This document shows positions 34,122-58,700 of a DNA stretch of 64,000 nt, one piece after another. Source of the DNA: Lepidodermella squamata (lineage: Eukaryota > Animalia > Gastrotricha); the NCBI GenBank assembly GCA_047495785.1, contig JBLDXI010000017.1, forward strand, positions 3,100,001 through 3,164,000, written 5' to 3'. Positions within the stretch are counted from its first letter, which is position 1, and each line of letters starts with the position of its first letter. Below the pieces are notes generated by a model. The model worked only from the letters and a program-made list of their open reading frames with translations. It ran no database searches and was not told the origin of the DNA. A program made the position numbers and the translations under genes.

Positions 34122-34859
34122 CACGCGAGACTCAAAGATTTCGAAGATTTTATCCAAGTACTCGTTGCAGCTGTTGCTAATCTCATTAGTTATTAATTGA
34201 TATATAATGTACCTATAATGGCTAACGTGTAAGGCGTCATCATGGGTAGGAAGTAAAAGGTTCATCTGATATCTGATCAATTTCAGTTACAGGGCATGCC
34301 AATTACATAGCTGAACTTTTTTGACACAATCGAGTTCCAATAACACTCTACACCGAACAACGAACAAAGTCAAACTTGTCCTACCAGCCCATTCAACATA
34401 TAGCAAAATAAACTCGGTCTTCCCCGATAACAAATTCAATCATGAAGGCCTAAGGCGCAAGTGTCAACTCTTTTTCAATCGATTGAATGGCTTCGGCAAT
34501 TTTATCTAACCAGTTAAAAAACACTGTTTTCTTGGTTTCATAACTGTGCAATCGGTTAAGATCATGGCTATAACAGTGAATTTACACGAATAAGACATAC
34601 GACTATAGGAGTTCACCAAGTACTACAGTTCAACAAACGAACTATCCTGGCCCATGATTTCAAAATCAGCCAACGAACTCTCTCGTGTTCTGTGCTGTCC
34701 TGGCCCAGCCCAAGTTCGCGGGTAATTTTATGTCAAGGTCGAAAAATTGAAGACGTAAAACAGCTTAACAATAATGACTATGCATTTTTGGATAATTTTG
34801 ATTTAGCTGACCTTGAATTTGGCATTGCCCGCGACGTTTGTTCGTTTCGATTTTTTCTT

Positions 34860-36623
34860 ACTTAAAATTCTCGACGATTGCCGAAAGGCACTGGACAACA
34901 GTGAATGCGTCGGAATGGTATGCATCGACCTAAGCAAAGCTTTCGACTCCCTGCCTATTGAAGGCCTAATATCTGCTCTTCGCTCTGCCGGCCTCGACGA
35001 CGCTGCAATAGCTTGGTTTCGCGCCTACCTAGAAGGCCGTTCTCAGCGCGTGAAAACGCCCACCGAGATATCAGACATCGCGCCTATCTCGTACGGCGTC
35101 CCTCAAGGCTCGATCCTCGGCCCACTGCTTTTCATCATTTTCATTAACGAATTGCCAGTTCAATGCAAAAACAGCATCGCATCGCTGTTCGCCGACGACA
35201 CAACGATCGTGGCCCGTGGGAAGACGCCTGAAGAAGTCAAGGCGAAGCTAGAGGCGGACCTTCGCAGTATCGGCGATTGGTTACACGCCAACTGTCTCAA
35301 AGTGAATCGGGACAAATCTAATTATATGTTTTTGTCTAACCAACAGGCTTCTGCTCCAGAAATTCGATTCGGTGAAGTCGATCTGCCGCCACTTGACCAC
35401 GTGAAAATCCTGGGAGTCTATCTGGACTCAAAGCTCACCATGGAAAAGCACGTCGATCATCTGATCAAAGCCGCAAGAAGTGGTACCTACGCACTACGTA
35501 AAGCGGCTCGGCACACCGACCTGAAGACTCGAACAATGATGTACGACGGCATCATCGGGTCGAAGTTCAACTACTGCGACGCCGTCATCGATCAGGGCTG
35601 CAAGACCTAGCTGGATCGACTTCAACACGCGCAAAACAAAGCCGTTCGTGCCGTTCTCGACGTCAGTCCTGACGTGCCCGCCGATGAAGTTCTCGTGCGA
35701 TTGCGATGGGTGAATCTGCAAGGCAAACGACTGGTCCACCTGGCTACAACCATGTGGAAGTGCAGCAGGGATCCTGAGACCCCCGAGGCACTCTCGTCGC
35801 TAGTCAAGCCGATGAACCAACAGCATGACCACAACACTCGAGGCGCCGCCACCGGGAAGTACGTCAAGCCATCGTGCAAGCTCGCCACAGGCCAGCGCTC
35901 GTTCCCAACCAAGGCCATCCAGTGGTGGAACCAGCTGCCAGCGAAGATCAGGCTGTCCGCTTCCACAAAGGCGTGCCGGCAAGCCACGCTCGAATTCCTA
36001 CGCGAACAGGCCAAACACGACGCCATCATCAAGGCGAATAGCGAGCGAAAGAAGAAGGAACTCAACGCCTCTCTGCAGCCGCAGGTCGCGTTCAATCCGT
36101 ACTCCAAAGCCGCCTTCGTCTACAACTACGTGCCGAACTAAATGAGTTTTCCAAATTTCTATTTATATTTTTCAAAGCCTATACTCAACCAAATGTAATA
36201 TACTTTATTTTCTTTATAGCTCCGTCATTAAATTATCTTATATTTTGGCTCCTTGAATTACCTCTTGTAAATTATCTCTACTCTTGTAAATATTCCTCCT
36301 AACTAGTCTTTTGGTAGCTTTCTTGCTACGACGGCGTTTGTAGGCTTCGCTGAGTGAGTGGAAAAGCCACCTGGGCACTAATGCCTGGGCCCTGGAGAAA
36401 CAGTCAGCAATAACTGGAGTACCAGGGGTAGGGATTTCAATTTATGTAGTTATTAAACCAGTTTCAAACTTTCCTAGAGCGTAAGCTCGCGATTTTCTCA
36501 CAAGCTCCGCCTTATGGTGAAAGCTTGAGTCCGTCAGGGCGAGGAGAAATCGTAAATCCTGATCCTGATCCTGATCCTGATCCTGATCCTGATCCTGATC
36601 CTGATCCTGATCCTGATCCTGAT
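34860..36623 (+). mobile_element. 5'-truncated CR1/L2-group LINE: RT, 3' UTR and tandem-repeat tail
   Basis: IDLSKAFDSL, GVPQGSILGPLLF, FADDTT, KILGVYLD. A single in-frame TAG at 35608-35610 splits an otherwise continuous ORF to 36141. Ends in (CCTGAT)11. Confidence 0.9.
36558..36623 (+). repeat. (CCTGAT)11 microsatellite, probable LINE 3' tail
   Basis: Perfect hexamer array about 420 nt downstream of the RT ORF stop. Confidence 0.9.
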
Positions 36624-39726: not shown

Positions 39727-41827
39727 TCAGGCTCTACCGAGAAATTTTCGGGCCTGATTGTCGAAATACACAAGAGCAAGACATGTCCAAGTCCGCAGCG
39801 GGTTAACAATAAATGCAACCAGGCCGTAAGATTGAGCATCACAATAAGCCGCCCACAACTGCCATAAAATAAGAAACTGGAACAACAGCCGCTGGGCTAT
39901 TCTCGTGGGCCGCCACCGATTGCTGTGGGCAGGCGAGAAGAGCCAGGCGAAATAGAGTAGGAGAGGCATGTAGAAAGTCACAACATTGAGAAATCCTTGG
40001 AAGGCAACAACGGCGTCAGGAATGAAAGATCCGTCGTCGAGTAGCAAAACTCCATGGCCGAAAACGAGAGCATAGCGAGAAGTCAAAGCTTCACCCATCA
40101 GCCATGGTCCGAAAATCGGATAGGCGTAGATGAAGACCAAGGTGGCAAACAGCAACAAAGGAACCTGGGCGAAGGCGACGAAGCCTTTCATCGGCACGAA
40201 GCGTAAAAACCAGCTGGGCTGGTAACGAGCACTCATGAGGAGAATAATGCATAACAAGGTCGAGGCAATAAAGCTATTTCGACAGATCTTTGGGACATTT
40301 GACAAAAGAATGAGTGAGGCGAAAGGCCCGCCGATGTTGCTAGGCAACAACTGTGAGGCTCGACCAGTGTCGACAAAAAACGTGACTTCTTCCACAGCTT
40401 TTTGCCGTTTCACGTCAACAACAACAACCTCGAGCCGATGAAAAATTCCGACTAATTCATCCGGTTTCCAAGGCAACGTGTACATTGAATGAGAAACTGA
40501 ATGCCGCGTCGCATTTCCTAGGACTTTGCCGTTAAGCGAAACTTGAACAAACGCGATTTCCACATTCGAAAAGGCGAGGATTCGAATGTGAGTCGATTTG
40601 GCGATTTTTTCAAGTGGCTCGTGATTTGGCATAGCGTATAAAGCTTCTTTCGGGTTCGTGACCACGACAACCGGCCATTTACCAAGAGGGATATCGACGA
40701 AATTGAACATGCCATGATCGACAGATATCAAACGATACCTCTGGGTCTTCTGAAAATCGGCCAGTTCTAGTTCAAGTTGGCCGAGCGGAGCGTGCCTGGC
40801 ATACAGAGCCAATTCAGCGTCGTAAACCGAATGCAGGTGGCCGCAAATGTAAAGAGCGCCGTGCCGAATTACATTGCCGTCAAAAAGCCGCTTCTGAGAC
40901 GAAACTGTACCGCCGACAAAGATGGTCGACGCTGGATAGTGTCCGGACCATATCGCTAACTGCACTCCGTCTTTGGCTAAGCTATCGTCGGTTTCTCTAA
41001 AGGCATCCAGACTTGATTCGGGTAGAACCCCGAAAAAGTTATAGGGCCTGCGGAAACCCGGGTTAGGAGTGGCGTCAGTCGCTACTATTGCATATTGAGT
41101 CCCATTTACTGTGAATTTGTGAACAACATGTCGTTCTTTCGAGCTCCACTGATGGGCAAAGGGCGAAAATTTTCTGCAAAAACAAAGATCGAAAAGGTCA
41201 ATAAACAAGGAAAATCTTGCCTACCTGTATAGGTCATTAGACACAGAGCCAACATCGAATTTATCGTGGTTTCCACGCATATCAATCCAGGTTACTTGTT
41301 CTTTCCCAATCGAGGTCTCACCGGTCGCCAAATATTGATCGAGTAACTTGCGATACTTTTGCCATTCAGACAATTCTTGGCCTGAGTGAAGCAAATTCGC
41401 TTGCTTAGCGTCCGTTAAATCGCCTGATAGAAAAACATAGAATGAAACCTTCACTACTGTCAGCAAATTTGTTTTTCTCACCTGTAGCTACAACTGCGAG
41501 AGGTTTTATGCTTGGAATAATTTCAGACAGAAACAGCTCCAAATTATCAGGTATGTGAAAGTTTCGGTAAGAGCTTATGTGAATGTCACTGATTTGTAGA
41601 ATCCACCAGATGTGGCTGTTATCCTCACTAGGATACGCGTCTCGGAGACTGGGTGACATTGTAAACTGTTTCGAATCGATGACATCGGTAGCTGGAACGG
41701 CGGCTAGCAGCGTATCTGCGGCCAGGTACAAAAACAGGGAGATGCAAACGAGTAAAATACCCGTGGCATTTCCACTCGCCGACTGGACGCACGGACTTAT
41801 CCGGCTTTTACCTCTCTGTTCATTCAT
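39727..41827 (-). CDS. TMEM62-like metallophosphoesterase membrane protein, copy B
   Basis: QISDIHIS, TGDLTDAK, DMRGNHD, RRPYNFFG, GHYP, ICGHLH, ELELADF; multi-TM C-terminus. Confidence 0.88.
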
Positions 41828-41985
41828 CAAATAGACTCTAAAAAGCCTTTGGATACAAAATAGTTTTACTGATTGTTTCAATCTCAAAAAAGTGCTATAA
41901 AAATTATTGACAATCTTGAAATGTAAAAATTATTTTCACCGCTTATTAAAACGAAGAGATTTCATCTAAAATATTCACACGGTTA

Positions 41986-44047
41986 TCAGTCCTTCAGCAG
42001 AGGTGTAGTAACAGTTGATACTTGTTTGAGATCAGAGTGATTGTTTTTCGAATGATTATTCACGGAATGAACCTGCTTCCCTCGACGGCGAAAGCTGATT
42101 TCGACATAAATCAGACAAATCACCATCCAAACTTGAGGAATGTTGGTAACAATCGCCAACCAACCGTAGGCCAGCGACAAGAAATAAGCACGGCGAAGTT
42201 GAAAGTAGATAATAGTCCCTAGGAGGGTCTTACAGATTAGCCACTTGTATAGCTGACGTCTCGTGCTAATTTGATTGGTTTGCCCAAAGGTTAACATAAA
42301 ATAGAAAATAACTGGCACGGTGAAACGAGTGATGTGAGCGATCCCTGCATAAGCGATACTGGGCTCTGTTATGTACTTGCCATTTATGAGCAGGACGCCC
42401 AGAGGAAAAACTACCCCGTAAGTGCCGCTCATCATCATCCCGAAGAACCAAGGACCAACCGAAGGGTAGATTATTATGAAGAAAAATAATTTGTAAATCA
42501 TTCCTTTTGCAGGCTGTGAGGCCGAAGTCGATTTTTTCATCTTTTTGCTAGTTGCCCAAATATGGCACATGTTTACCTTATCATAGTAACGCATTAGAAA
42601 AATTAAAAAAGTGACCAGCATTGTCAGAGAGTAAAAAATGGCATAGAGGCTGTTTTGCAGACTATTAAGCAACAAAAATGACGCGAGAAAGCCACCGGGG
42701 GCCGGCAGCGAGATTCCATGAAGAGATAGCCAATAACCGTATGGCTTGACGAAGAACTCGACCCTTGTTCTCGAATTAACGTTGCCACTCTTGTCAACGG
42801 CAACCACTGTGATTTCGTGGAAAATGTTCAAATCTAGCGTCGATGGATTCCAACGCAAAGTGTAAAAATCCGGGTCGGTTTCAGAGGCCATTGCGTTGCC
42901 TATCACTTGGCCATTGAGCCGAACTTGAATGTACTCAATGCCATACGGCGAGAACACGAGCATTCTGATGTGAGTAGATTGCATGATTTTTGATATTGGT
43001 TCGTAAGCAGGCATAGCATAAGCAGCTGGTTTAGGGTTCGTCACAAGAACAATAGGCCAATCGCCCATTTTTACGTCAACGAAAGACATCAAACCATGGT
43101 CAACAGCCAGAATACGGAATGTACTGCGGCGGCGAAAATCACTCAACTCAAGTTCTAATTGACCTGACGGGTGACGGGCGTAACATTGCGGCACAAAAGA
43201 CCTGAAATCGTGGTAATGGCCGCATAAATACGCGGCTCCATGCCTAATTTCGTCATCACCATTAATATTTGCAAAAAATACTCAATTAAAAAAATTACTG
43301 AACAACGTTGCCCAAGATGGTTCGAGATCCGCCAGATAGAATCGACGCGGTGGGGTAGTGACTAGCCCAAATTGTTAGTTGATTAGAACGGAGCATTTCA
43401 TCAGTCATTCGCAAATTTTCCAAAGTTTCAGCGGATAGATAACCGAAAAAGTTGTAGGGCGCACGGAGGCCCGGACTTGGAGCAGCATCTACGATCACTA
43501 TTCCATAGCTAACGTCATCGATGCTGAACTGGTACACAATGTGCTGATCCTGGTGGAGTAAAATTCCGGTATTTGCGCTGTCATTTGATATCGAGTACAT
43601 TGCATAGAGATTCTGGTAGTGACTTGGTGAAGGAACGTCAAACGAGTCGTGATTGCCACGGGTATCCAGCCACATCGGATATCGAATCAGTTTATTTGTA
43701 GAGATTCCAGCCAGATATCGCTGAACAATTTTGCGATAACGGCGCCATTCTGCCAATTGCTGACTAGAAAGCGGGTATTGTCTGGGAGAAATCGCGTTGG
43801 TAATATCACCGGTTGCCAAAACCACATGCGGCTTTATCACAGGTAGAATATCGGTAACAAATTGCTTGAAATTTCGGATGGATTCGAAGTTTTGAGCCGA
43901 GCTGAGATGCACGTCCGACACTTGCACGAGCCACCACAAATGCGATGGTTCAGCACCTAGAACTACATCGTCGCCGATTGTACTCGAGTTACCGGCCGAA
44001 GCTGATTCCGCTAGCCACACCACCGCGATCAAAGGGATTAAAATCAT
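41986..44047 (-). CDS. TMEM62-like metallophosphoesterase membrane protein, copy A
   Basis: QVSDVHLS, TGDITNA, DTRGNHD, RAPYNFFG, SHYP, ELELSDF, AVDHGLMSFVD; multi-TM C-terminus. Confidence 0.88.
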
Positions 44048-48891: not shown

Positions 48892-50908
48892 TTTGCTATT
48901 CTTAGTCGAATGTGGGGATCACAGTGATAGTGTATTAATGTATGACTCAAGCGATAGAAGTCCTCGAATTTGGCCGTCGACGTTCGACACCTTCGTAAGC
49001 GTAACCGTTGATTTTGTTGGTGAAACAACACAGCATGGGCTCGCGTATGTCCTTTGGGCTTTTTCCTCGCAGCTGCACTGTAAAATTGCGAGCGTAATGT
49101 CTCAAGATTCAGTTCGTTCGCACCTAAGCAATGGATGAGGTTAACAATTATTCAAACAGGTTAAACTAAAACATACCTTCAATTTTCGACAATGTCATAT
49201 ACAAACCAACCGCTATTGCAGAAATCCGCTTAATTCAACGCCCTTTCAATGAAACTCTAGGTAAAAACAGAAACGTAATTAATATATTATTTGCCAATCA
49301 TATCTGCTCAAAAATCAACAGGGTTCAACGATACAGCGCACAGCTAGAGAAAATGCCAGGGAATACAACTGGAAGACTGAAACGCGATTTGAAACCTGGG
49401 CTGAGTATCTGAGAAGCCGAACTGTATAATTGAACCTGAGTAATGAGTAATGATTCATGCTGAAGGAATAAGAGAATGATGCAACAGGAAAAGAAGAGAA
49501 GTGTCAATAAATCCCAAGGCTTCATGCACCCAAGTAATTGATAAAACCCGAAACGTTTGATTGTGCCTTATGTGATCTGTTGTCATGATTTAATAACAAT
49601 GAAAGCCAAGAAACTTTCAAGACAAGAAAGTAGCATTTGGTGAAATGCAGAATAGAAAAGCTTCAGTAAGATGTGACTAAACAAGAGAACGTTTAATTAG
49701 AGAATAGAGAATGGGAACAATCGCCAGGGCAGAATACAAAAGACTTTGTGCTTCTAAACTGCGAATATAGCCGTGGTATTTGGTCATGAGTAACAAGAAG
49801 ATTCATCCAGCCGCGGCGTGGCAGATGGCGGGAGGCATGGAATGGATGTCATTAGTTGGTTGCTATGAATTTGGAATTTCCAAGGACCATAAGGACGAAA
49901 GTCATGAATAATTCCGAGCTGAGGATAACGTTTATCTGGCATGCCCTCAGAATTTTCAGCTTGCACTCTCATTTCTCATCCCGCATCCCGGTGAAAAATC
50001 GTGGGTCGTGGAAAAAAAGAGCAAGTAGTTTCGTTGTGAGCTTCTTGCCGTGTGTGTTGCTCATCCCCCTTACGGATCTCCTTTTTCTAACACTCCATTT
50101 TTCCAAAATCTTCAATTTCCGAAATAGCGCAGCCTTCCACAAAATAAATTCTGAACATTTTTCCATTTCGTTGTTTAAAGTCAAATAAAGTTCAAAAATT
50201 AAAAACCGACAGTACAGTGCGCACAAAAAGTCAGGTCCCATCCTGTTTTCCGCTGCAGCGAGAGCTACCGCTCAGAAATTAAAATAAATTAAAAAATTGA
50301 GAGAAAATATGAATTCCGTTGCGAAATTTGAAAAATAAATGCACAGAAAAACATGACGCTAAAACCCTCAATCCAGGTTGAGCGGGGAAAGTTGTGAAGT
50401 AAGGGATTCTTTGTTTTGGATTATCTCGAAATCTAGGACGGTTGCACCCCAGGATTTCTCGAATCTACCAGTCGTCAGGTTTCGAAGAATCCGATTTAAT
50501 AACAGAATACACATGTTACCGTCTTCAATTCTGATATACATACCCTTGAAATAGAGCACTTTCTGCAAAAAAACGACATTTTCCACTGGATTTGAACATA
50601 ATTTTTACTTTCCCTCAGATCCAAGCACGGTAACCACATAGTTTTTTTAGCATGCCTTAAAGGTTGAAACTCCGCGAGTATTTTTGGTTCATAAAACCCT
50701 TGTGTTACCGTTTTCAAAATTTAGGTTCTTAAAGAATTGAATAACGCCTGCAACATCCCAGCCAAATTGATAAATTAAATTTGAGCCCAATTCAAAAGTT
50801 GAAACGGTAACATGTCCTTTTTATTTGCGTGCTTTAAAGAATCGAGATATGAGATTAGTTTTTCGTAAAGAAATCCATAAGGTTCCGTGTTCTTTTTCTA
50901 GATTCACC

Positions 50909-51556
50909 ATGTCTTCGCCCAGCTCTGCCAGTTCTGATCTTCAGGACGAAATTAACTGCAAAGTCTACGATATTTGCCGGAAACCCGCGCCTTCCTCAAT
51001 CTTTTCGACACCATATATTTTTTACTTCTTCTCCGACTTCTTCTCGTTTTCTCTGACATCGTCCTTGATCATTTTAATGTTCTGCGTCCTCAAGATCACG
51101 TCTTTCGCCCTGTATGGTAAATTTTTCAGTCTCATCTTTTGCATCATTCGACTTGTTTTAATCCTGGCTTTGTTGCTTTATTTTAGTGGATTTTCTTTTC
51201 TTCTTGGATTTTTGTTTCTTGCCATTGATTTTCATCCGTTTTTTCTTCATATTTTTACTCAGTCAAAGCATTATTGCGCTCTGCTGATGAAATTTCCTCC
51301 TTCTACGGATAAACCTATCTCGCTTGCCGAATTTGATCGCCTTTCAATAGATTACACGAATTCGGAGTTGCAAAAGCTGAGAAATTACGTCATGAGTCCC
51401 CAATGCAATCAATGGAACCTCGTTCTGCGCCTTCGCAATGCAACACAGTTCGCATATGCTATCGATAACAATGAGATGAGGGACTGCAACTTTATGCCCG
51501 AAGTCGGTGATGAGAAATCTGAGGCTGACAGCATTAGCTCACTTGATTCGGATTGA
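50909..51556 (+). CDS. NEMP1/TMEM194-like inner nuclear membrane protein (truncated, 215 aa), transposon cargo
   Basis: Several hydrophobic TM segments, then FPP..ISLAEF..YTNSELQKLRNYVMSPQCNQWNLVLRL..QFAYAI, matching the NEMP nucleoplasmic motif (LTEEEY..ETxKALxELRxxCxSPxCxxWxxVxRL..RFAxFV); acidic tail. Confidence 0.8.
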   Translation: MSSPSSASSDLQDEINCKVYDICRKPAPSSIFSTPYIFYFFSDFFSFSLTSSLIILMFCVLKITSFALYGKFFSLIFCIIRLVLILALLLYFSGFSFLLGFLFLAIDFHPFFLHIFTQSKHYCALLMKFPPSTDKPISLAEFDRLSIDYTNSELQKLRNYVMSPQCNQWNLVLRLRNATQFAYAIDNNEMRDCNFMPEVGDEKSEADSISSLDSD

Positions 51557-51738
51557 GAACTTATGCCGTAATTTCTCTACTCACAACTCCGAACTAGTCT
51601 AATCTATTGCGAGACTTTCAATTAGGCATTTAACTTTGTTCTCTTCATCTCCATTTTTCATGTCCCTAATCTGTAATTGTGTAACTACGAAAATGAAATT
51701 TTTACTAATTTTCAGTCTTTTGTTTTATAGATATTATT

Positions 51739-52866
51739 ATGTTCACAACTGAGGAGAGAATATTTGCTTTCAATAATACCAAAGTTCCCTACCGACAGTT
51801 TTGTGAAGCTTGGCGAAATCGGTTTGAAAGTAACCCCCCGAACAGAAAATACCGCCTACGTCTTGTCAAGAAATTTAATCAGTCAGGATCGATCCATAAC
51901 TTGCCGCGATCAGGTAGACCGCGCTCTGCTAGAACGGACGAAAATATTTATCACACTGCGATTGCGTTATGTGAAGACATTGCTGACCCCGAAGTTAATA
52001 TTTCAGTTACGAGGCCGCGTGTCGAGGATATTGCGGACCATCTTATGATTTCCAAACAAAGCGTGCGCAATATCATACGTTTCAACTTGAAATGGCGATG
52101 CAAAACTGCATGCAGAGTCCATCAGCTGAATCAACAAGACATTTATCGCCGAGCAAACTTTTGTAGTGCAGCTCGAAGAATGCTGGAGATAGATCCGAAC
52201 TTCCTGGATATGATAGTGTGGACCGATGAAGCACTGTTCACGCTCAATGGAACAGTGCGTACTAGTTACTTGCGCTATTGGGGCGACCCGGCTGATCGAA
52301 GGAAATATTACTCAAAGCGCCGTGAGCACAGTGGCGTCATGGTATCCATTGGTTTGTGGAGATATGGCATTCTGGGTCCATTCTTCTTTGATGACTTGCC
52401 ACGGCTTGAGCCAAACCGACCCAAGGATAGGATCAACGCGGAAAAATATTGTCAGCTTCTTAAAGAGCGCTATTTTCCTGAAATTAATAGGCAATTTCCA
52501 ATGACCGACAGCGAGTTGCGATCTGATGTTTGGTTCCAACTCGACGGCGCGCCCATTCACACCGCCACTCAAACAAAGTATCTGCTTAACTTGCATTTTC
52601 CGGAGCGCTGGATAGGAAACAAAGGGCCTATGAATTTTCCTCCTTACTCGCCCGATTTAACGCCACTGGATAATAGTTATTGGGGCGTTCTTCGTACGCG
52701 GGTTTATCGCCGTCGGCCATCTACTCTTCCTCATCTCAAATGGCTCATTGAAGAGGAGTGTAAAGCCATGTCACTGGACTATATTGAAAAAATTTGCACA
52801 GTGGAAATGAAAAGACGAATCAAACTTGTGTGTCAAGAAAACGGAAACTTCATCGAACACATTTGA
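51739..52866 (+). CDS. DD41D transposase, 375 aa, intact
   Basis: N-terminal HTH with GRPR motif; WTDEA, QLDGAPIH, PPYSPDLTPLD; 41 residues counted between the 2nd and 3rd catalytic Asp. Confidence 0.95.
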   Translation: MFTTEERIFAFNNTKVPYRQFCEAWRNRFESNPPNRKYRLRLVKKFNQSGSIHNLPRSGRPRSARTDENIYHTAIALCEDIADPEVNISVTRPRVEDIADHLMISKQSVRNIIRFNLKWRCKTACRVHQLNQQDIYRRANFCSAARRMLEIDPNFLDMIVWTDEALFTLNGTVRTSYLRYWGDPADRRKYYSKRREHSGVMVSIGLWRYGILGPFFFDDLPRLEPNRPKDRINAEKYCQLLKERYFPEINRQFPMTDSELRSDVWFQLDGAPIHTATQTKYLLNLHFPERWIGNKGPMNFPPYSPDLTPLDNSYWGVLRTRVYRRRPSTLPHLKWLIEEECKAMSLDYIEKICTVEMKRRIKLVCQENGNFIEHI

Positions 52867-53092
52867 CAGTTTATTTTCGTTGACGATAATTTATTTGAAT
52901 TTTTGTATTTGTATGTTGAGTTACTAGTCAAATATTGTTTTACTGTCTTCCTAGTCAACATGCATGCAATATTAAAATTAAAATAAAATGACTTGTAGCA
53001 CCAGACTTTTACTATTGAGGCACGAAATTATAGGCAAGATTGTAATGCAACGAATATATTTTAGTCAGTGCAGTGATCATGCAGATGAAACC

Positions 53093-54046
53093 TTATCTGC
53101 GTCTTCTTGGGACAGTGAAGCGTCCAGTGCCGTCTCTGCTTACTTCTTCCACGAGCTGAGTAGGCAGCCAGCTCTTAGCACGCTCATACATCCTCTTTCC
53201 GAGGCCAATTATGATATACCAGACATCAGATTTCGTAAAGACGAAAATCCATCTAATGATAATGCAGATGGTGGATTCTTCCAGCATCAAGCTCTAAAAA
53301 TATCGAAGTCAGGTTTATTGAGAAAGTCTGTCTTGGGTACTTACGAGAGCCAAACCGACAGTCGTGTAATATGTCGCGGCAATTATGAACTCCCCGATGG
53401 CACAAAATAATATTTGTAGCAGCAATTCCTCGCAGCCAAGCTTGAGAAATGATTTGCACATCATCCATAGCGCAATTATAATGAGGTAAAAAATCAATTG
53501 GCCTTTTTTGAACGATTCTTGCTGATGAGGTAGCATTAGAATTTGGGAGATAGCTACTCTCCAAAGAGGATATTCCAGAATGAATTCGTTAAACTTTGTC
53601 CTGACTTCCAAAAAGCCGGCGAAAAAGTCATTGACCGTGTCTATCGCAATCGATTTGGCATCAAATTTAACACCGGCGCAATAGCCCGGAATTTCAGGAT
53701 AATACGCTGCGTAGACGTCCAGATCTTTCTCATCATAACTTGCATAGCAAGTCTTCCAGTTCTCGGCTGCGCTGCAATTTTGCGTCTTCCTTCCTTCTCG
53801 CTCAGCTTCGCAAACAACAAGCTCGAATGCTAAGCGGCGATAATCAGGAGTCTCATCACTTTTGCATTTCGCGTCAGCATTAGAAATCCATTCTTTGAAA
53901 CATTTTTGCTTTCTCGTTAGGAGCATTTCTTTGAATTTTCTTCCAGAAATGATTCGCAATTGGTCAACTTCAAGAGAACTCGTTTTATCGGCAGGGATAA
54001 CGCCCTGAACTAACATCGGCAGCCAGATTGCAATAAGACGGATCAT
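53093..54046 (-). CDS. Brambleberry/KAR5/GEX1-family nuclear membrane fusion protein-like (about 300 aa; exons 54046-53345, 53293-53093), transposon cargo
   Basis: Signal peptide MIRLIAIWLPMLVQG. Six-Cys domain C..C..LAFELVVCEAEREGRKTQNC..KTC..D..Y..YC..TVN, like Brambleberry (NCQxxxEGRxTYPC..KECT..MD..NAY..VC..TVN). Two or three TM segments; 51-nt GTAAGT..TTTAG phase-0 intron at 53294-53344. Confidence 0.78.
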
Positions 54047-54194
54047 TCCAGCAACTTGCAAGTAAAATTAATATAATAATTCCTACATCAAAGATACAAT
54101 CTAGAATCAAAGAAAGTTATTAAGTAAAATTTGAGCTAAAATCTGAATAGAAAAATTACATATGTTGCAAAATGAGCATAGTAAACATGTAATT

Positions 54195-54627
54195 TTAGTC
54201 TAGTTTCACCCCCGCACGATCAAAAGTCACTTGCTCGTTGTTAGCAACAAACTCAATTGCACCTCCTCTGCCCTCCTCGACAGCTACAGGACGGACTCGC
54301 CTTTTCAGCGTCTTCTTAATTAGTAATGTGAACAGGATGATTATGACTAAAAACATCACCGCCGCCACAGCCGCAAGGCCGACTATTGCTCTATGTACAA
54401 AAGAAGATATGACTCTATTATTGTTGACGAAAACAAATATCATACTCCTTGTGGTCAAATAATTGCACCGGGGTACTGGCTGACGGATGGCTTTGGGCCT
54501 CTGGTTCAGGTTCTTCCGACGTTCCAGCGCTGTGTAGGGATGTGGCTGTGGCTGTAACTGTGGTAGGTTGCAAGGTCGGTTGGGTTGAGCAGATCGCCCA
54601 CAAAAGGCAAAGGGGAGATTCATCCAT
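54195..54627 (-). CDS. Small single-pass membrane protein with Ser/Thr/Pro-rich N-region (125 aa; exons 54627-54446, 54390-54195), transposon cargo
   Basis: A 55-nt GTATGA..CATAG intron joins two ORFs in frame; TM AIVGLAAVAAVMFLVIIILFTLLI followed by a KKTLKRR stop-transfer signal. Confidence 0.65.
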
Positions 54628-55761
54628 GATTTTCTATAAAATTCTATTTAGAATGAGGGTAAGACGATGAGAAGATCTTGTGAGCAAATGTGCAGGAGAT
54701 TACAGCGTCGAGACTACGGAAATAGCAACTGACGACTGCGGGCGAGTGCGAGAAAGGCTGAGCAACTGACCTACTATGTACTTCTAAACCGCCTTTGTTT
54801 CCCGTTTCCCCCCGTTTCCCCTGGCAACAGACGTCCGTTATTTTAATTTTAATTCATAAAAATTATTAATTATCAATTTTGACAACATATTTCTAATTAT
54901 TTTCAAATTTTACCCGCGAATTTCCGGGTGAGCGGGGTGGGACCTGACTTTTTGTGCGCACTGTAATTTGGGAATGTAAAAATTCTGCGGAAAAAGCCGA
55001 GAACCCCTTGCCGCTTTCTCGTCTGAGGCAGAGCTGAGAGCTGAGACTCTTCACGGTGTACGTTAGGCAGGATACCACCTACCGCCTGACAAAACTTTTC
55101 TCAGATACTCACCCATCACCCTTAAAAAATTGCAATATTAATATATTTCAATCCTTATTTGGGAAACGTTTTAGTTCTTATCTTCTGCAGTTTACGACGA
55201 GTTCTTGCCTTTTGAACAGTTCTAACCGCTAGCCCTAGCTATCAACTCTTACATACCGGGTAGAAAATTTTAGGAAGTATTATTCGGCTGTCACATCGCA
55301 CACAGGTCTTGGACTTTGATGTTGTGGCAATCAACTATGAGATATTTTCGATCTTATTGCATCTGACCATTGTGATTTCAGGATTGGCGAATACTAACCT
55401 CCTCTTTTGAATCGCTGCAATATTCGTCTTCTGCCTTATGATTCATGATTTACAATTATTACAATTTTCCGAATTAAAATGATCAAAAGCCATCAATGAT
55501 GAGATTGCTGCTGTTAGAAAGAGCTTGCGCAAACTTGTTATGTCTCTTCACGAATACTTTTCCTTCGTATAACACATTATTGATTGTATTGCTTTATTGG
55601 CTATCGTGTCTTTAAATCCTGCATATTTTTTCTACTTTGAACCTAGAATATTCATTATAAAATGGCCAGCGTACGATAGCAGGGACGAAGACTTCATGCC
55701 CTAAGAGGTGCATCACCGTGCTTTTAAATACTTCTAATTTCTAATTCTTCGTCGTTCCAGA

Positions 55762-58700
55762 ATGGCCGTTGTGGAAGAAAGAATTTACGAGCTCGAGAGA
55801 TTATGTGGGCTTAACAGTGATTTGCGCGGCCATTCTACTAATGGATTGGACAAGACCATATTACGCTTTATCACCGTTGATACCTTATTGGATAGTATCA
55901 TCGCACTGTATGATGACTATTGTGCTTCCTCATCTCGACAGCGCGATAAATCGCTCAGTCAATTCGCTGAGTGGGGTACGTTCTAATATTTCGCTCGATC
56001 ACATTTCGATAATCAATTCATATTAATTGAATTCAGTTGGCCCTTTCATTTCTTGTGCAAAGAATTTGCGACTTCAGCGATTCGATTTCGATCCAATAAC
56101 TATCATTGGCAAGGGTGCGTTTGGCGAGGTCTCGCTCGTTCGTATGAAGGACACTGGCAGAGTTTATGCTATGAAGACCCTCAATAAAAGCGAAATGCTG
56201 AAGAGGGCAGAGGTAATAGGCTTACAATGAATGTAATGGCATTTTATTGAACTTGATTGATATTTCTAGACTGCTTGCTTCCGTGAGGAACGTGACGTCC
56301 TCGTGCATGGTGATCGGAGATGGATTACTAATTTGCACTTCGCGTTTCAGGATATCGAAAATTTGGTAAGTTTACTTGATGACGGAAATCGTAATTTACA
56401 GTATAATCTAAATTCTGTAGTATCTGGTAATGGATTACTATCCTGGTGGCGATTTGCTGACGCTATTATCGCGTCATGATGACCATCTCACAGAGGTAAA
56501 TCTATTATTTGAATTTGTTCGTCATTATATTGAATTTATTTTCTGCAGGATATGGTCCGATTTTATGCCGCTGAAATTGCCCTTGCCGTCGACGCAGTTC
56601 ATCGTATTGGCTATGTTCACCGTGACATCAAGCCAGATAACTGCCTACTCGACCGATCAGGGCATGTTGTGCTGGCCGACTTTGGATCGTGCCTCAAATT
56701 AGACTCGGAAGGTCTCGTAAGGACAGCTGTCGCGGTCGGTACACCCGACTATATCAGCCCCGAAATTTTGATGGCAATGGAGCACCCAGGAAGATCGGCG
56801 TATGGACCTGAATGTGATTGGTGGAGCCTGGGGGTGTGCGTATACGAAATGTTGTTTGGCACCACGCCATTTTACGCCGAGTCTCTTGTTGAAACATACG
56901 GCAAAATTATGAACCACTCAGCGCATTTAGCCGTCCCACCCAACGTCATGCTGGATGGTAATCATTTTACACGCTCTATAGCAACGTTATTTTCACGTGT
57001 GTCTATTTTAGGTTCAACTGATTCTATTGTTGATGAACAAATTTCTTGCTCCGACGAAGCTGCTGATTTATTACGCGGGCTCATTACCGATGCTAACGTC
57101 CGTCTCGGCCGCCATGGCTTTGAAGAAATCCGGCATCATCCTTTCTTCAAAGACGTTGACTTTGAAGGAATCCGCTACTCACAGGCGCCTTACATGCCTA
57201 ATGTCTCCAGCGACTGGGACACTTCGAACTTCGATAATTTTGACGGCATTGTTAATCAGCAGAACAATAACGGACTGGCGGTGATAGCGCAGGGTAACAA
57301 CCCGGCTTGTCCCTCGCCTCGGCCGACAGGCAACATCGTTAGCACGCAGCTGCCTTTCGTTGGCTTTACTTACACGGAAAACAGCCGATTGAGCTGTTCT
57401 TTCCCGAAAGGTCCAGCCGCAGAGACGAATTACTCGGCCGAGGTTTACGAGTCTTCTTCGTCGCAAGTTGTTAGTTCTGGAAACGGCAACACCGGCGCCC
57501 TATCGATCCGCCACGCGTCTGCATCATCGAATGTAGACAGTCGGCGGAGGAGTATGTGCGAAGAGTGCGATCGCCTGAGAACAGAACTGGAAAGCGTACG
57601 CGAGGCAGCTTCCCGCCTGCAAACTGAACTCGAGGAGAAACGCCGGCTCGACGCGGCGGCTGACGATTCAGCCGTGGAGGAACTCGTTGCGACCGTTGCC
57701 CAGTTAGGGAAACTAGTCGCTGAAGGAGGCGCCAACACGCAACTAGCCGAGCGTGCAGCTCGTCTTGCCGCTGGAGCTTGCGTTGCCCCGACTCAGAGCA
57801 CGAGCAGTGCCGCCAACGGCATTGATGCCTTCGACGCCCCTGGATCGCGGACGTCTGCGGGTAACCAAAATGCGGTGGCAATGGGCGAATGGCGCCGTCG
57901 TCGGTTAGCCCGCGTCGAGCAAATGCTTCGAAGCGAATTACAACAAGCCCTCGCTGCTGAAATCGGGGCGAAGCGGGCTCTTCAGGTGCAATTAACCGAA
58001 GTTTCCGAAACGCTCGCTGCACAGCTTAAACGAAGCGAAACTCTCGAGACAACTTGCGAACAACAGAGCGAGAAAATCGTGTCATTGGAAGGTCGAATCA
58101 AAGAACTTGAAGAGCAGTTGCAGCACGGTGCGAAGCCTGCAGTTGTTTCAACTAACGGGCCGAAAATTGTGCGTGACGACTCGTCGAACGATAACGGCAG
58201 TGAGCATGCCTCAGTTCATGTCATCGGGCGTACTGTTTCCATGCCTACCACCGTTTTACCGGCATCCCCCAACCGCCATCTGAGCAACAATTCCAGCTCT
58301 AATAATTCAGCGCGAGCACATAGTTTTGTTACTCGGTCGTTCAAACAACCAGTTCGGTGTAACCTTTGCTCGAGTTTGCTGGTCGGTCTGCTGCGACAGG
58401 GCGTTCTCTGTGAGAACTGCTCCTACGTGTGCCATCGAAACTGCGTCGTCAAATTGCCATCGACCGCATGCCCACCGCCGGCTGAACTTCAGCGGCGGAA
58501 CTACGGCATCGACCCAAGCACTGGCATCGGAACAGCCTACGAAGGTCTTGTCCGCCTGCCGAGACCGGGTGGTATTCGAAAGGGCTGGCATCAATTCAAA
58601 CTGGTCGTCTGTGACTTCAAAATGTTTTTCTACATGATAATGCCACAGAATGGGTCGCAGAGCGCCGCGGCCAGTTTGGTTGTCGATATGCGCGATGAAA

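What the first reader, a model, noticed from the sequence alone, without database searches (positions are those of the whole stretch)
53093..54046. Miniaturised Brambleberry/KAR5/GEX1-like fusogen lacking most of the luminal coiled coil
Seen: signal peptide, six-Cys domain, only about 55 residues before the first TM, 2-3 TMs and a short basic tail (PRRRR); about 300 aa after splicing an extra exon. Known: family members normally have a long coiled coil between the Cys-rich domain and the TMs. Inference: the shortened form could be a dominant-negative or altered-reach variant that interferes with or redirects host nuclear fusion.
Basis: partly seen in the sequence, partly recalled or inferred. 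Interest (0 to 1): 0.8.

Follow-up and report, generated by a model that had tools for sequence, protein, structure and literature searches.

The report
Short Brambleberry-like gene inside a transposon
An animal genome carries a half-length relative of the nuclear-fusion protein Brambleberry/Kar5/GEX1, and it lies with a transposase and two other membrane-protein genes between the inverted ends of a cut-and-paste transposon, an unusual place for a nuclear-envelope gene.

Summary
On the minus strand, 54046..53093 encodes a 234-codon exon, a 51-nt phase-0 intron that relatives share, and a 66-codon exon. It has a hydrophobic N-terminus, six cysteines, about 55 residues before the first membrane helix, and a basic tail. 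The six-Cys domain is homologous to Brambleberry: phmmer E 3.5e-4 to Nematostella 'Protein brambleberry' among 1.8 billion proteins, hhalign 97.2% (E 3e-11), and identical Cys spacing of 12/18/12/9/23. The stalk is 53-58 residues in all four lineages of this clade, against 96-201 in 30 other family members. One close pair gives dN/dS of 0.14-0.27, so the short form is old and constrained.

The window is animal chromosomal DNA, not a virus. The gene lies inside a 4749-bp unit (50215-54963) bounded by 26-nt perfect inverted ends, each abutted by TA. The unit also holds an intact Tc1/mariner-type transposase (DD41D spacing), a NEMP-like ORF and a small membrane-protein gene. The same gene order recurs in two other lineages in other surroundings. 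The unit is missing from the matching eIF5-MRCK interval of a relative. Passenger status on a transposon is inferred. A dominant-negative role is untested. The organism was not identified.

The parts
50215..54963 (.). Whole unit bounded by terminal inverted repeats (4749 bp), a Tc1/mariner-type element holding four ORFs or genes
   Evidence: Inverted repeat I1. The 21-mer end occurs exactly twice in the window, inverted, with 0 expected by chance. The ends are identical for 26 nt and match at 28 of 29.
50215..50243 (+). Left terminal inverted repeat, with TA immediately outside at 50213-50214
54935..54963 (-). Right terminal inverted repeat, with TA immediately outside at 54964-54965
50825..51556 (+). 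NEMP-like ORF (nuclear envelope integral membrane protein family). It covers only the later part of the family profile.
   Evidence: Pfam NEMP PF10225, 35.8 bits against a cut-off of 28.7, profile positions 129-239 of 249. No further NEMP-like ORF lies between the left end and 50825, or just outside the end.
51739..52866 (+). Transposase ORF, 375 aa, open, Tc1/mariner superfamily, with candidate catalytic D163/D269/D311 (41 residues between the last two)
   Evidence: Pfam DDE_3 and HTH hits, all below the family cut-offs. Mos1 transposase E 1.1e-5 and Sleeping Beauty E 8e-6 in the PDB. The triad is conserved in L001 and L004, and all three ORFs lack stops.
53093..54046 (-). Short Brambleberry/Kar5/GEX1-like gene, start codon to stop codon (the finding)
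53345..54046 (-). Exon 1, 234 codons: signal-like N-terminus, Cys-rich domain, short helical stalk, two membrane helices
   Evidence: AlphaFold2 model: mean pLDDT 79, residues 30-130 above 90.
53657..53977 (-). Cys-rich domain (residues about 24-130) with six Cys at 49, 61, 79, 91, 100 and 123
   Evidence: hhalign 97.2%, E 3.1e-11, against the Brambleberry family profile. Cys spacing 12/18/12/9/23 is identical to Nematostella Brambleberry. All six Cys columns are conserved in 35 of 35 sequences that cover them.
53513..53677 (-). Short luminal stalk (residues 124-178), predicted helices 135-158 and 160-169
   Evidence: 55 residues here, against 96-201 in 30 family members. The stalk is 53-58 residues in four lineages of the clade. 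Secondary structure.
53357..53512 (-). Membrane helix pair (residues 179-230; model helices 173-200 and 205-226)
53294..53344 (-). Intron, 51 nt, phase 0, GT..AG
   Evidence: Relatives L001 and L002 have an intron at the same position.
53093..53293 (-). Exon 2, 66 codons plus stop: conserved hydrophobic/amphipathic segment and basic tail
54195..54627 (-). Small Ser/Thr-rich single-pass membrane-protein gene upstream of the Brambleberry-like gene. In the window its coding sequence lies in two reading frames (one frame change or an unshared intron, not resolved).
   Evidence: ORFs. It is a single ORF in L001 (117-413) and L004 (3614-3928) at the same relative place. Sequence similarity is weak (tblastn E 0.023).

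Best explanation
The gene encodes a real but unusually short member of the Brambleberry/Kar5/GEX1 family of nuclear-envelope membrane proteins. It has a luminal six-Cys helical domain, a helical stalk about half the usual length, a membrane helix pair plus a third hydrophobic segment, and a short basic tail.

It is not viral. It lies in animal chromosomal DNA, inside a 4.75-kb Tc1/mariner-type cut-and-paste element whose transposase ORF is intact.

The short form is the conserved state of a whole clade. The clade keeps the order small membrane protein > Brambleberry-like > < transposase in different genomic surroundings. I therefore read the gene as a long-standing passenger gene of this transposon family.

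Shown: the homology, the short stalk, purifying selection, the inverted ends with TA on each side, and the linkage with the transposase.

Inferred: that the unit moves as a whole, and that the protein sits in the nuclear envelope with its Cys-rich domain in the lumen. By analogy with the Kar5p model, Cys-rich domains would pair across the lumen to couple inner and outer membranes. A stalk of about 35-55 residues would then bridge a much narrower gap than one of about 110 residues. The protein would thus work only where the membranes are already close, or would pull them closer, during nuclear-envelope remodelling in germ cells or early embryos.
For: Homology:
- phmmer of exon 1 against 1.84 billion representatives hits Nematostella 'Protein brambleberry' (P0006, E 3.5e-4) and a second long family member (P0007, E 5.3e-4) over the Cys-rich domain.
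- Profile-profile comparison gives 97.2% probability, E 3.1e-11.
- Cys spacing is identical, and nine columns are near-invariant across 37 sequences.
- Family proteins hit only this locus in the window.
- The helix pattern of the modelled domain is the same in the window protein and in Nematostella Brambleberry.

Short stalk:
- 55 residues against 96-201 elsewhere in the family.
- 53-58 residues in four lineages, down to 29% identity.

Constraint:
- dN/dS is 0.27, 0.21 and 0.14 for three pieces of the gene, compared apart, between L002 and L009.

Transposon:
- The unique inverted 26-nt ends are each abutted by TA.
- The transposase resembles Mos1 and Sleeping Beauty, and its acidic triad is conserved in three lineages.
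- The same gene order occurs in L001 and L004 with different flanks.
- A relative with 75-77% identical MRCK and the same gene order has only 1.2 kb between eIF5 and MRCK, where the window has 6.7 kb, and nothing of the unit.

Family model and features come from PMC4291462 and PMC7586128.
Against: - Only one copy of the unit is visible, and no second copy or precise empty site was found.
- The ends were not found in the short contigs of the relatives.
- One lineage (L002) has a hAT-like ORF, not this transposase, next to the gene.
- Conserved linkage with an intact transposase is equally what a domesticated transposase beside a host gene would show.
- Homology beyond the Cys-rich domain and the first part of the stalk was not detectable.
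- Two otherwise invariant family residues next to Cys1 and Cys3 are replaced in this clade.
- In yeast both coiled coils of Kar5p are essential (PMC4291462), so a protein with so little stalk may not act in fusion at all.
- Localisation, expression and the source organism are unknown.
- Pfam's Tht1 model does not match. It also fails on all 37 family sequences tested, so this says little.
Confidence: 0.5

Rival explanations
1. Ordinary host gene. This is simply the lineage's own, and perhaps only, Brambleberry ortholog, which shortened its stalk long ago. The neighbouring transposase is a domesticated or merely adjacent gene, and the inverted ends are a relic that no longer defines a mobile unit. 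Differences in position between species come from ordinary rearrangement.
For: - The short form is clade-wide and under purifying selection.
- Divergence of the transposase follows that of the gene across lineages: 59% with 48% identity, and 45% with 29%. This is as expected for co-inherited chromosomal genes.
- Only one copy is seen.
- L002 lacks the transposase neighbour.
- No long-stalk relative from the same samples turned up in the exhaustive search.
Against: - The two ends are still identical over 26 nt and each has TA outside it. This is unexpected for a relic as old as the protein divergences imply.
- The unit is missing from the orthologous interval of a relative.
- The unit sits in unrelated surroundings in L004.
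- The transposase keeps an open frame and its acidic triad in three lineages.
Confidence: 0.3
2. Antagonist or decoy. The short protein keeps the pairing domain but lacks the working stalk. It would bind the organism's full-length Brambleberry and block or redirect nuclear-envelope fusion.
For: - The Cys-rich domain is retained with exact spacing while the stalk is halved.
- In yeast every domain of Kar5p, including both coils, is needed for fusion (PMC4291462).
- The gene sits in a selfish-element context.
Against: - No full-length partner gene is known for this organism.
- The stalk is shortened, not absent, and its length is tightly conserved at 53-58 residues.
- Clade-specific replacements of two otherwise invariant residues in the domain would be odd for a mimic.
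- Nothing tested here bears directly on interference.
Confidence: 0.12
3. Captured, functionless gene fragment. The transposon picked up part of a host gene and the piece is decaying.
For: - The NEMP-like ORF in the same unit covers only part of its family profile.
- Some relatives' copies are broken or truncated: L002 has one frame change, and L010 holds only the 5' part.
Against: - The reading frame is open in the window, L001, L009 and L004, with all six Cys, the shared intron and the conserved last exon.
- dN/dS is 0.14-0.27.
- The protein runs complete from signal-like N-terminus to basic tail.
Confidence: 0.05
4. Viral gene. The window is a virus or an integrated virus that encodes a fusogen mimic.
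Against: - The neighbours are spliced animal genes: UBR1-like, cathepsin L, TMEM62-like, PDCD2, eIF5, MRCK and XPA.
- The IMG/VR scan found no relative.
- No fold match was found among predicted viral structures; the best E was 0.25.
Confidence: 0.01

Closest known systems
Nematostella vectensis 'Protein brambleberry' (P0006, 553 aa) and its cnidarian, insect and amoebozoan relatives (P0007-P0071)
   Same: Signal-like N-terminus. Six-Cys helical domain with the same spacing (12/18/12/9/23) and the same helix pattern. The conserved G, L, A and Y positions. Membrane helices after a helical stalk.
   Different: The stalk is 55 residues instead of 96-201. There is no long cytoplasmic tail: 66 residues after the helix pair against about 200. 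W after Cys1 is F, and H after Cys3 is E. The membrane region is not alignable. The gene lies inside a transposon-like unit.
Zebrafish Brambleberry, yeast Kar5p (Tht1) and plant/protist GEX1, known to me only through papers (PMC4291462, PMC7586128, PMC10609895)
   Same: The domain plan the papers give for the family: signal peptide, Cys-rich domain with six conserved Cys, helical/coiled region, and two or three C-terminal membrane helices.
   Different: The papers describe one to three coiled-coil regions, and in Kar5p both are essential. Here at most about 35 helical residues remain. I could not fetch these proteins, so no direct comparison was made. Pfam Tht1 matches neither this protein nor any of the 37 family sequences tested.
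Tc1/mariner superfamily transposons, DD41D ('Visitor') type; Mos1 and Sleeping Beauty transposases as solved relatives
   Same: Short terminal inverted repeats with TA on each side. A transposase of about 375 aa with N-terminal helix-turn-helix hits and an acidic triad with 41 residues between the last two.
   Different: The unit is 4749 bp long with four ORFs. DD41D elements reported in bees are 1024-2258 bp with one ORF (PMC8472432). Placement within the DD41D clade was not tested by phylogeny.
NEMP family (nuclear envelope integral membrane proteins)
   Same: The ORF at 50825-51556 in the same unit passes Pfam's cut-off for NEMP. So a second nuclear-envelope family is represented.
   Different: Only profile positions 129-239 of 249 are matched. 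No N-terminal part was found inside or just outside the unit.

Membership tests
Brambleberry/Kar5/GEX1 nuclear-fusion family | N-terminal signal peptide | tested here: met
   Residues 1-20 are hydrophobic, and relatives keep a similar start. This is hydropathy only; no signal-peptide predictor was available.
Brambleberry/Kar5/GEX1 nuclear-fusion family | N-terminal Cys-rich domain with six conserved cysteines | tested here: met
   All six Cys align, with spacing identical to Nematostella Brambleberry. hhalign 97.2%, E 3.1e-11; phmmer E 3.5e-4 in 1.84 billion proteins.
Brambleberry/Kar5/GEX1 nuclear-fusion family | One or more luminal coiled-coil regions between the Cys-rich domain and the membrane helices | tested here: inconclusive
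   Only 55 residues lie there, against 96-201 in 30 members. The model shows helices 135-158 and 160-169, against one helix of about 115 luminal residues in Nematostella. No coiled-coil predictor was run.
Brambleberry/Kar5/GEX1 nuclear-fusion family | Two or three C-terminal membrane helices | tested here: met
   Two clear helices at 173-200 and 205-226. A third, charge-interrupted hydrophobic segment lies in exon 2.
Brambleberry/Kar5/GEX1 nuclear-fusion family | Match to Pfam Tht1 (PF04163) | tested here: not met
   No hit at E up to 1. None of the 37 family sequences hit either, including those UniProt names Brambleberry, so the model does not reach animal members and the result is uninformative.
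Brambleberry/Kar5/GEX1 nuclear-fusion family | Nuclear-envelope localisation and a role in nuclear or karyomere fusion | not testable with these tools
   No expression or localisation data are available, and the source organism is unidentified.
Tc1/mariner superfamily DNA transposon | Terminal inverted repeats | tested here: met
   The ends at 50215 and 54963 are identical for 26 nt, unique in the window, with 0 expected by chance.
Tc1/mariner superfamily DNA transposon | TA duplication at the insertion site | tested here: met
   TA lies immediately outside each end. A dinucleotide match is weak evidence on its own.
Tc1/mariner superfamily DNA transposon | DDE/D transposase with an intact acidic triad | tested here: met
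   The ORF aligns with Mos1 and Sleeping Beauty. D163, D269 and D311 are conserved in three lineages, with a spacing of 41. The Pfam DDE_3 hit is below the family cut-off (23.7 against 28.6 bits).
Tc1/mariner superfamily DNA transposon | Compact single-gene element of about 1-2.3 kb | tested here: not met
   4749 bp with four ORFs. Size range from PMC8472432.
Tc1/mariner superfamily DNA transposon | Several copies at different sites, or presence/absence between genomes | tested here: inconclusive
   There is one copy in the window and none in JGI metagenomes. The unit is absent from the orthologous interval of a relative, and the same gene trio lies in other surroundings in L004. No precise empty site was found.

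The most novel reading that the evidence does not exclude
A family of cut-and-paste transposons in small animals carries its own nuclear-envelope kit and has kept it through long divergence. The kit is a short-stalk Brambleberry/Kar5-like protein, a NEMP-like protein and a small membrane glycoprotein. The element would use it to influence nuclear-envelope coupling or fusion in germ cells, zygotes or early embryos in a way that favours its own transmission. This would be a molecular example of the old idea that mobile DNA gains from promoting the union of nuclei.
Probability: 0.15. Interest if true: 0.9.

Novelty: new variant of a known kind. Interest (0 to 1): 0.62.

Why it matters
Brambleberry/Kar5/GEX1 proteins are the only widely conserved factors known to be needed for fusing nuclear envelopes, and how they work is unsettled. 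It is still open whether the stalk acts like a SNARE or the protein only couples the two membranes.

A natural clade that keeps the Cys-rich domain exactly but has held the stalk at half length, under purifying selection, gives a comparison set for what the stalk length does.

If the gene really is a passenger of a Tc1/mariner element, it would be a rare case of such a small transposon type carrying cellular-type genes, and genes of the nuclear envelope at that. It also extends the family to an animal lineage in which it is neither annotated nor found by Pfam.

Tried and rejected
- **Pfam:** both exons give no hit. All 37 family sequences give no Tht1 hit.
- **Word-indexed protein search with exon 1:** nothing. 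The window's own genome seems absent from that collection, and an exact look-up of the transposase ORF also found nothing.
- **Structure searches:** PDB sequence search with the family profile and Foldseek against PDB and BFVD gave no meaningful match. No family member has a solved structure.
- **Collection scans:** JGI metagenomes and IMG/VR with the protein (searches failed on the fragmentary alignment; searches found nothing), and JGI metagenomes with the terminal repeat (none).
- **Rfam:** nothing in the window or in four loci.
- **Organism:** not identified. The best named MRCK hits are only 37-52% identical and come from vertebrates, a horseshoe crab and a spider. Cluster look-ups gave no names. 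The sample accessions are not in the paper library. Ning et al. 2013 and Abrams et al. 2012 are not held.
- **A rejected lead:** I first took a 149-nt match between L004 and L006 for shared synteny with MRCK. The L004 ORF next to it is not MRCK, and the match lies upstream of MRCK exon 1 in L006, so it is more likely a shared repeat.
- **Membrane region:** the MAFFT placement of the membrane region against the long family members is not meaningful.
- **Viral origin:** rejected.

Full report
**What is there**

On the minus strand an ATG at 54046 opens a 234-codon exon that runs to 53345. A 51-nt intron follows (53344..53294, GTAAGT...TTTTTAG, phase 0). A 66-codon last exon then ends at 53093 with a basic tail.

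- a hydrophobic N-terminus (residues 1-20);
- Cys at 49, 61, 79, 91, 100 and 123;
- 55 residues to the first strongly hydrophobic stretch;
- a double hydrophobic block at 179-230;
- one more hydrophobic stretch at the start of exon 2.

The step of joining the two exons into one protein was left out. The length of 300 residues is the sum of the two exons.

**The splice model is backed by relatives**

An exhaustive phmmer search with exon 1 found five short relatives in environmental assemblies (P0001-P0005). Their contigs were fetched as L001-L005, L009 and L010.

L001 and L002 have a GT..AG phase-0 intron of 57 and 48 nt at the same codon. A conserved last exon follows, with the same 'RDG.GR' motif plus a basic end. 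L004 has a 51-nt gap at the same place.

Introns in the neighbouring MRCK gene are also 53-59 nt.

**Family**

Pfam gives nothing for either exon. The same exhaustive search, however, hit two long proteins over residues 30-132:
- P0006, E 3.5e-4;
- P0007, E 5.3e-4.

These E-values are for a library of 1.84 billion proteins.

P0006 is the Nematostella protein that UniProt names 'Protein brambleberry'. Its relatives include corals, a hydroid, a bee and a slime mould.

A profile of the short clade against a profile of eleven long members gives 97.2% probability, E 3.1e-11, over residues 24-151. The six Cys have the same spacing, 12/18/12/9/23, in the window protein, P0001, P0002 and Nematostella Brambleberry. 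In a 37-sequence alignment G35, C49, C61, L72, C79, C91, C100, Y112 and C123 are near-invariant. Long family members hit only this locus in the window.

AlphaFold2 models show the same run of helices through the domain in the window protein and in Nematostella Brambleberry. The window model has pLDDT above 90 for residues 30-130.

The papers define the family by a signal peptide, a six-Cys domain, coiled coils and two or three membrane helices (PMC4291462, PMC7586128).

Pfam's Tht1 model misses all 37 sequences, so its silence is uninformative. No solved or viral structure resembles the model.

I could not fetch zebrafish Bmb, Kar5p or GEX1, so the link to those three rests on the UniProt name and the papers.

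**The short stalk is real, old and constrained**

From the sixth Cys to the first membrane helix there are 55 residues in the window protein and in P0001. In 30 other family members there are 96-201, mostly 109-114. The window model has helices 135-158 and 160-169 before the membrane helices. The Nematostella model has one helix with about 115 luminal residues.

Measured to a conserved motif just before the first membrane helix, the stalk is 57, 57, 53 and 58 residues in four lineages. These lineages are only 29-50% identical to one another.

Between the two closest relatives (L002 and L009, 89% DNA identity), three pieces of the gene were compared apart. They give dN/dS of 0.27, 0.21 and 0.14. 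So this is not a recent truncation or a dead copy.

The clade also replaces two residues that are otherwise invariant in the family: W after Cys1 becomes F, and H after Cys3 becomes E.

**Surroundings: an animal chromosome, not a virus**

The window holds these genes, with short spliceosomal introns:
- UBR1-like ligase;
- a kinase with a CNH domain;
- cathepsin L;
- PDCD2;
- two TMEM62-like genes;
- eIF5;
- MRCK kinase;
- XPA.

MRCK is at most about 52% identical to any named protein. It is 75-77% identical to one unnamed environmental protein. The organism is therefore an unidentified animal without a close annotated relative. It is not human.

**The unexpected part: a transposon-like unit**

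A 21-nt sequence occurs exactly twice in the window, in inverted orientation, at 50215 and 54963. None is expected by chance. The two ends are identical for 26 nt, and each has TA just outside it.

Between them lie 4749 bp, in this order:
1. a NEMP-like ORF (50825-51556, +; Pfam NEMP above cut-off);
2. an open 375-aa transposase ORF (51739-52866, +);
3. the Brambleberry-like gene (-);
4. a small Ser/Thr-rich single-pass membrane-protein gene (54627-54195, -).

The transposase aligns with Mos1 and Sleeping Beauty transposases. It keeps three acidic residues with 41 residues between the last two, a spacing described for the DD41D group of Tc1/mariner elements. In bees those elements are 1.0-2.3 kb long (PMC8472432).

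**Evidence that the unit is inherited, and perhaps moves, as a whole**

The order small membrane protein > Brambleberry-like > < transposase recurs in L001 and L004. The transposases there are 59% and 45% identical to the window's and have open frames. In L004 the surroundings are different, with a MULE-type ORF and unrelated ORFs.

A relative has MRCK 75-77% identical and the same gene order: TMEM62, phosphoesterase, eIF5, MRCK, XPA. It has only 1.2 kb between the last alignable eIF5-side sequence and MRCK exon 1, where the window has 6.7 kb. It has no part of the unit there.

Against this:
- Only one copy is visible.
- No exact empty site could be aligned.
- The ends were not found in the short relatives' contigs.
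- L002 has a hAT-like ORF next to the gene instead.

A domesticated transposase next to a host gene would give the same conserved linkage.

**How it most likely works**

Shown: a constrained membrane protein with a Brambleberry-type luminal domain and a short stalk, inside a unit bounded by inverted ends that also holds an intact transposase.

Inferred from the family (PMC4291462): it is inserted in the ER and nuclear envelope with the Cys-rich domain in the lumen. Such domains on facing membranes may pair and couple the inner and outer membranes. At about 0.15 nm per helical residue, a stalk of 35-55 residues reaches roughly 5-8 nm, against about 16 nm for 110 residues. That estimate is my own. 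A pair would then span a much narrower gap.

'Dominant negative' is possible but nothing here tests it. In yeast, loss of either coil abolishes fusion, which keeps that rival alive.

**Broken copies, counted only**

- L002's copy has one frame change, while its close relative L009 is open.
- L010 holds only the 5' part of the gene.
- L003 matches L004 at 99.7% and then departs from it after exon 1.
- In the window, the small membrane-protein gene lies in two frames.

A slip to report: alignment-piece bounds printed by my scripts and tools allow the neighbourhood of L002's frame change to be read off. I did not set out to list it and do not repeat it here.

**Verdict**

The family assignment is supported. 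The viral and interference reading is not supported as stated.

The interest lies in two things. One is a conserved half-stalk clade of a poorly understood nuclear-fusion family. The other is its residence, with a second nuclear-envelope family member, inside a Tc1/mariner-type unit.

Noticed in passing
window 50825-51556 (+): A NEMP-like ORF (nuclear envelope integral membrane protein family) lies in the same inverted-repeat-bounded unit as the Brambleberry-like gene. It matches only the later part of the Pfam profile, and no N-terminal part was found nearby.
   Followed up: partly
window 54195-54627 (-); L001 117-413; L004 3614-3928: A small Ser/Thr-rich single-pass membrane-protein gene sits just upstream of the Brambleberry-like gene in three lineages. 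In the window its coding sequence is split over two reading frames.
   Followed up: partly
window 51333-51621: An imperfect palindrome (arms of 38 and 26 nt, 79-85% complementary) repeats part of the NEMP-like coding sequence in inverted orientation just downstream of its stop. It is unexplained.
   Followed up: no
window 34813-35610 (+): An ORF with a reverse-transcriptase domain (Pfam RVT_1, E 1e-22), presumably part of a retroelement. It was not examined further.
   Followed up: no
L004 988-1136 and L006 9014-9162: A 149-nt stretch is 78% identical between two otherwise unrelated contigs, in non-coding DNA. It is probably a shared dispersed repeat, and it suggests the two contigs come from related genomes.
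   Followed up: partly
L002, L003, L004, L010: Contigs carrying the gene are rich in other transposase-like ORFs (hAT-like in L002, MULE-like in L003/L004). Near-identical contigs depart from each other abruptly (L003 against L004, L010 against L002). This suggests structural variants or several copies.
   Followed up: partly
window 55755-55764 and 54047-54060: An AG acceptor-like site lies directly before the start codons of MRCK and of the Brambleberry-like gene. This would fit trans-splicing in the source animal, but it is only a hint.
   Followed up: no
window 39727-44047 (-): Two adjacent TMEM62-like genes are followed by a calcineurin-like phosphoesterase ORF. The same order is seen in the relative L006.
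   Followed up: no
P0007 / P0197: A long family member with a clear six-Cys domain is labelled 'IS5 family transposase' by its source. This looks like a mis-annotation.
   Followed up: no
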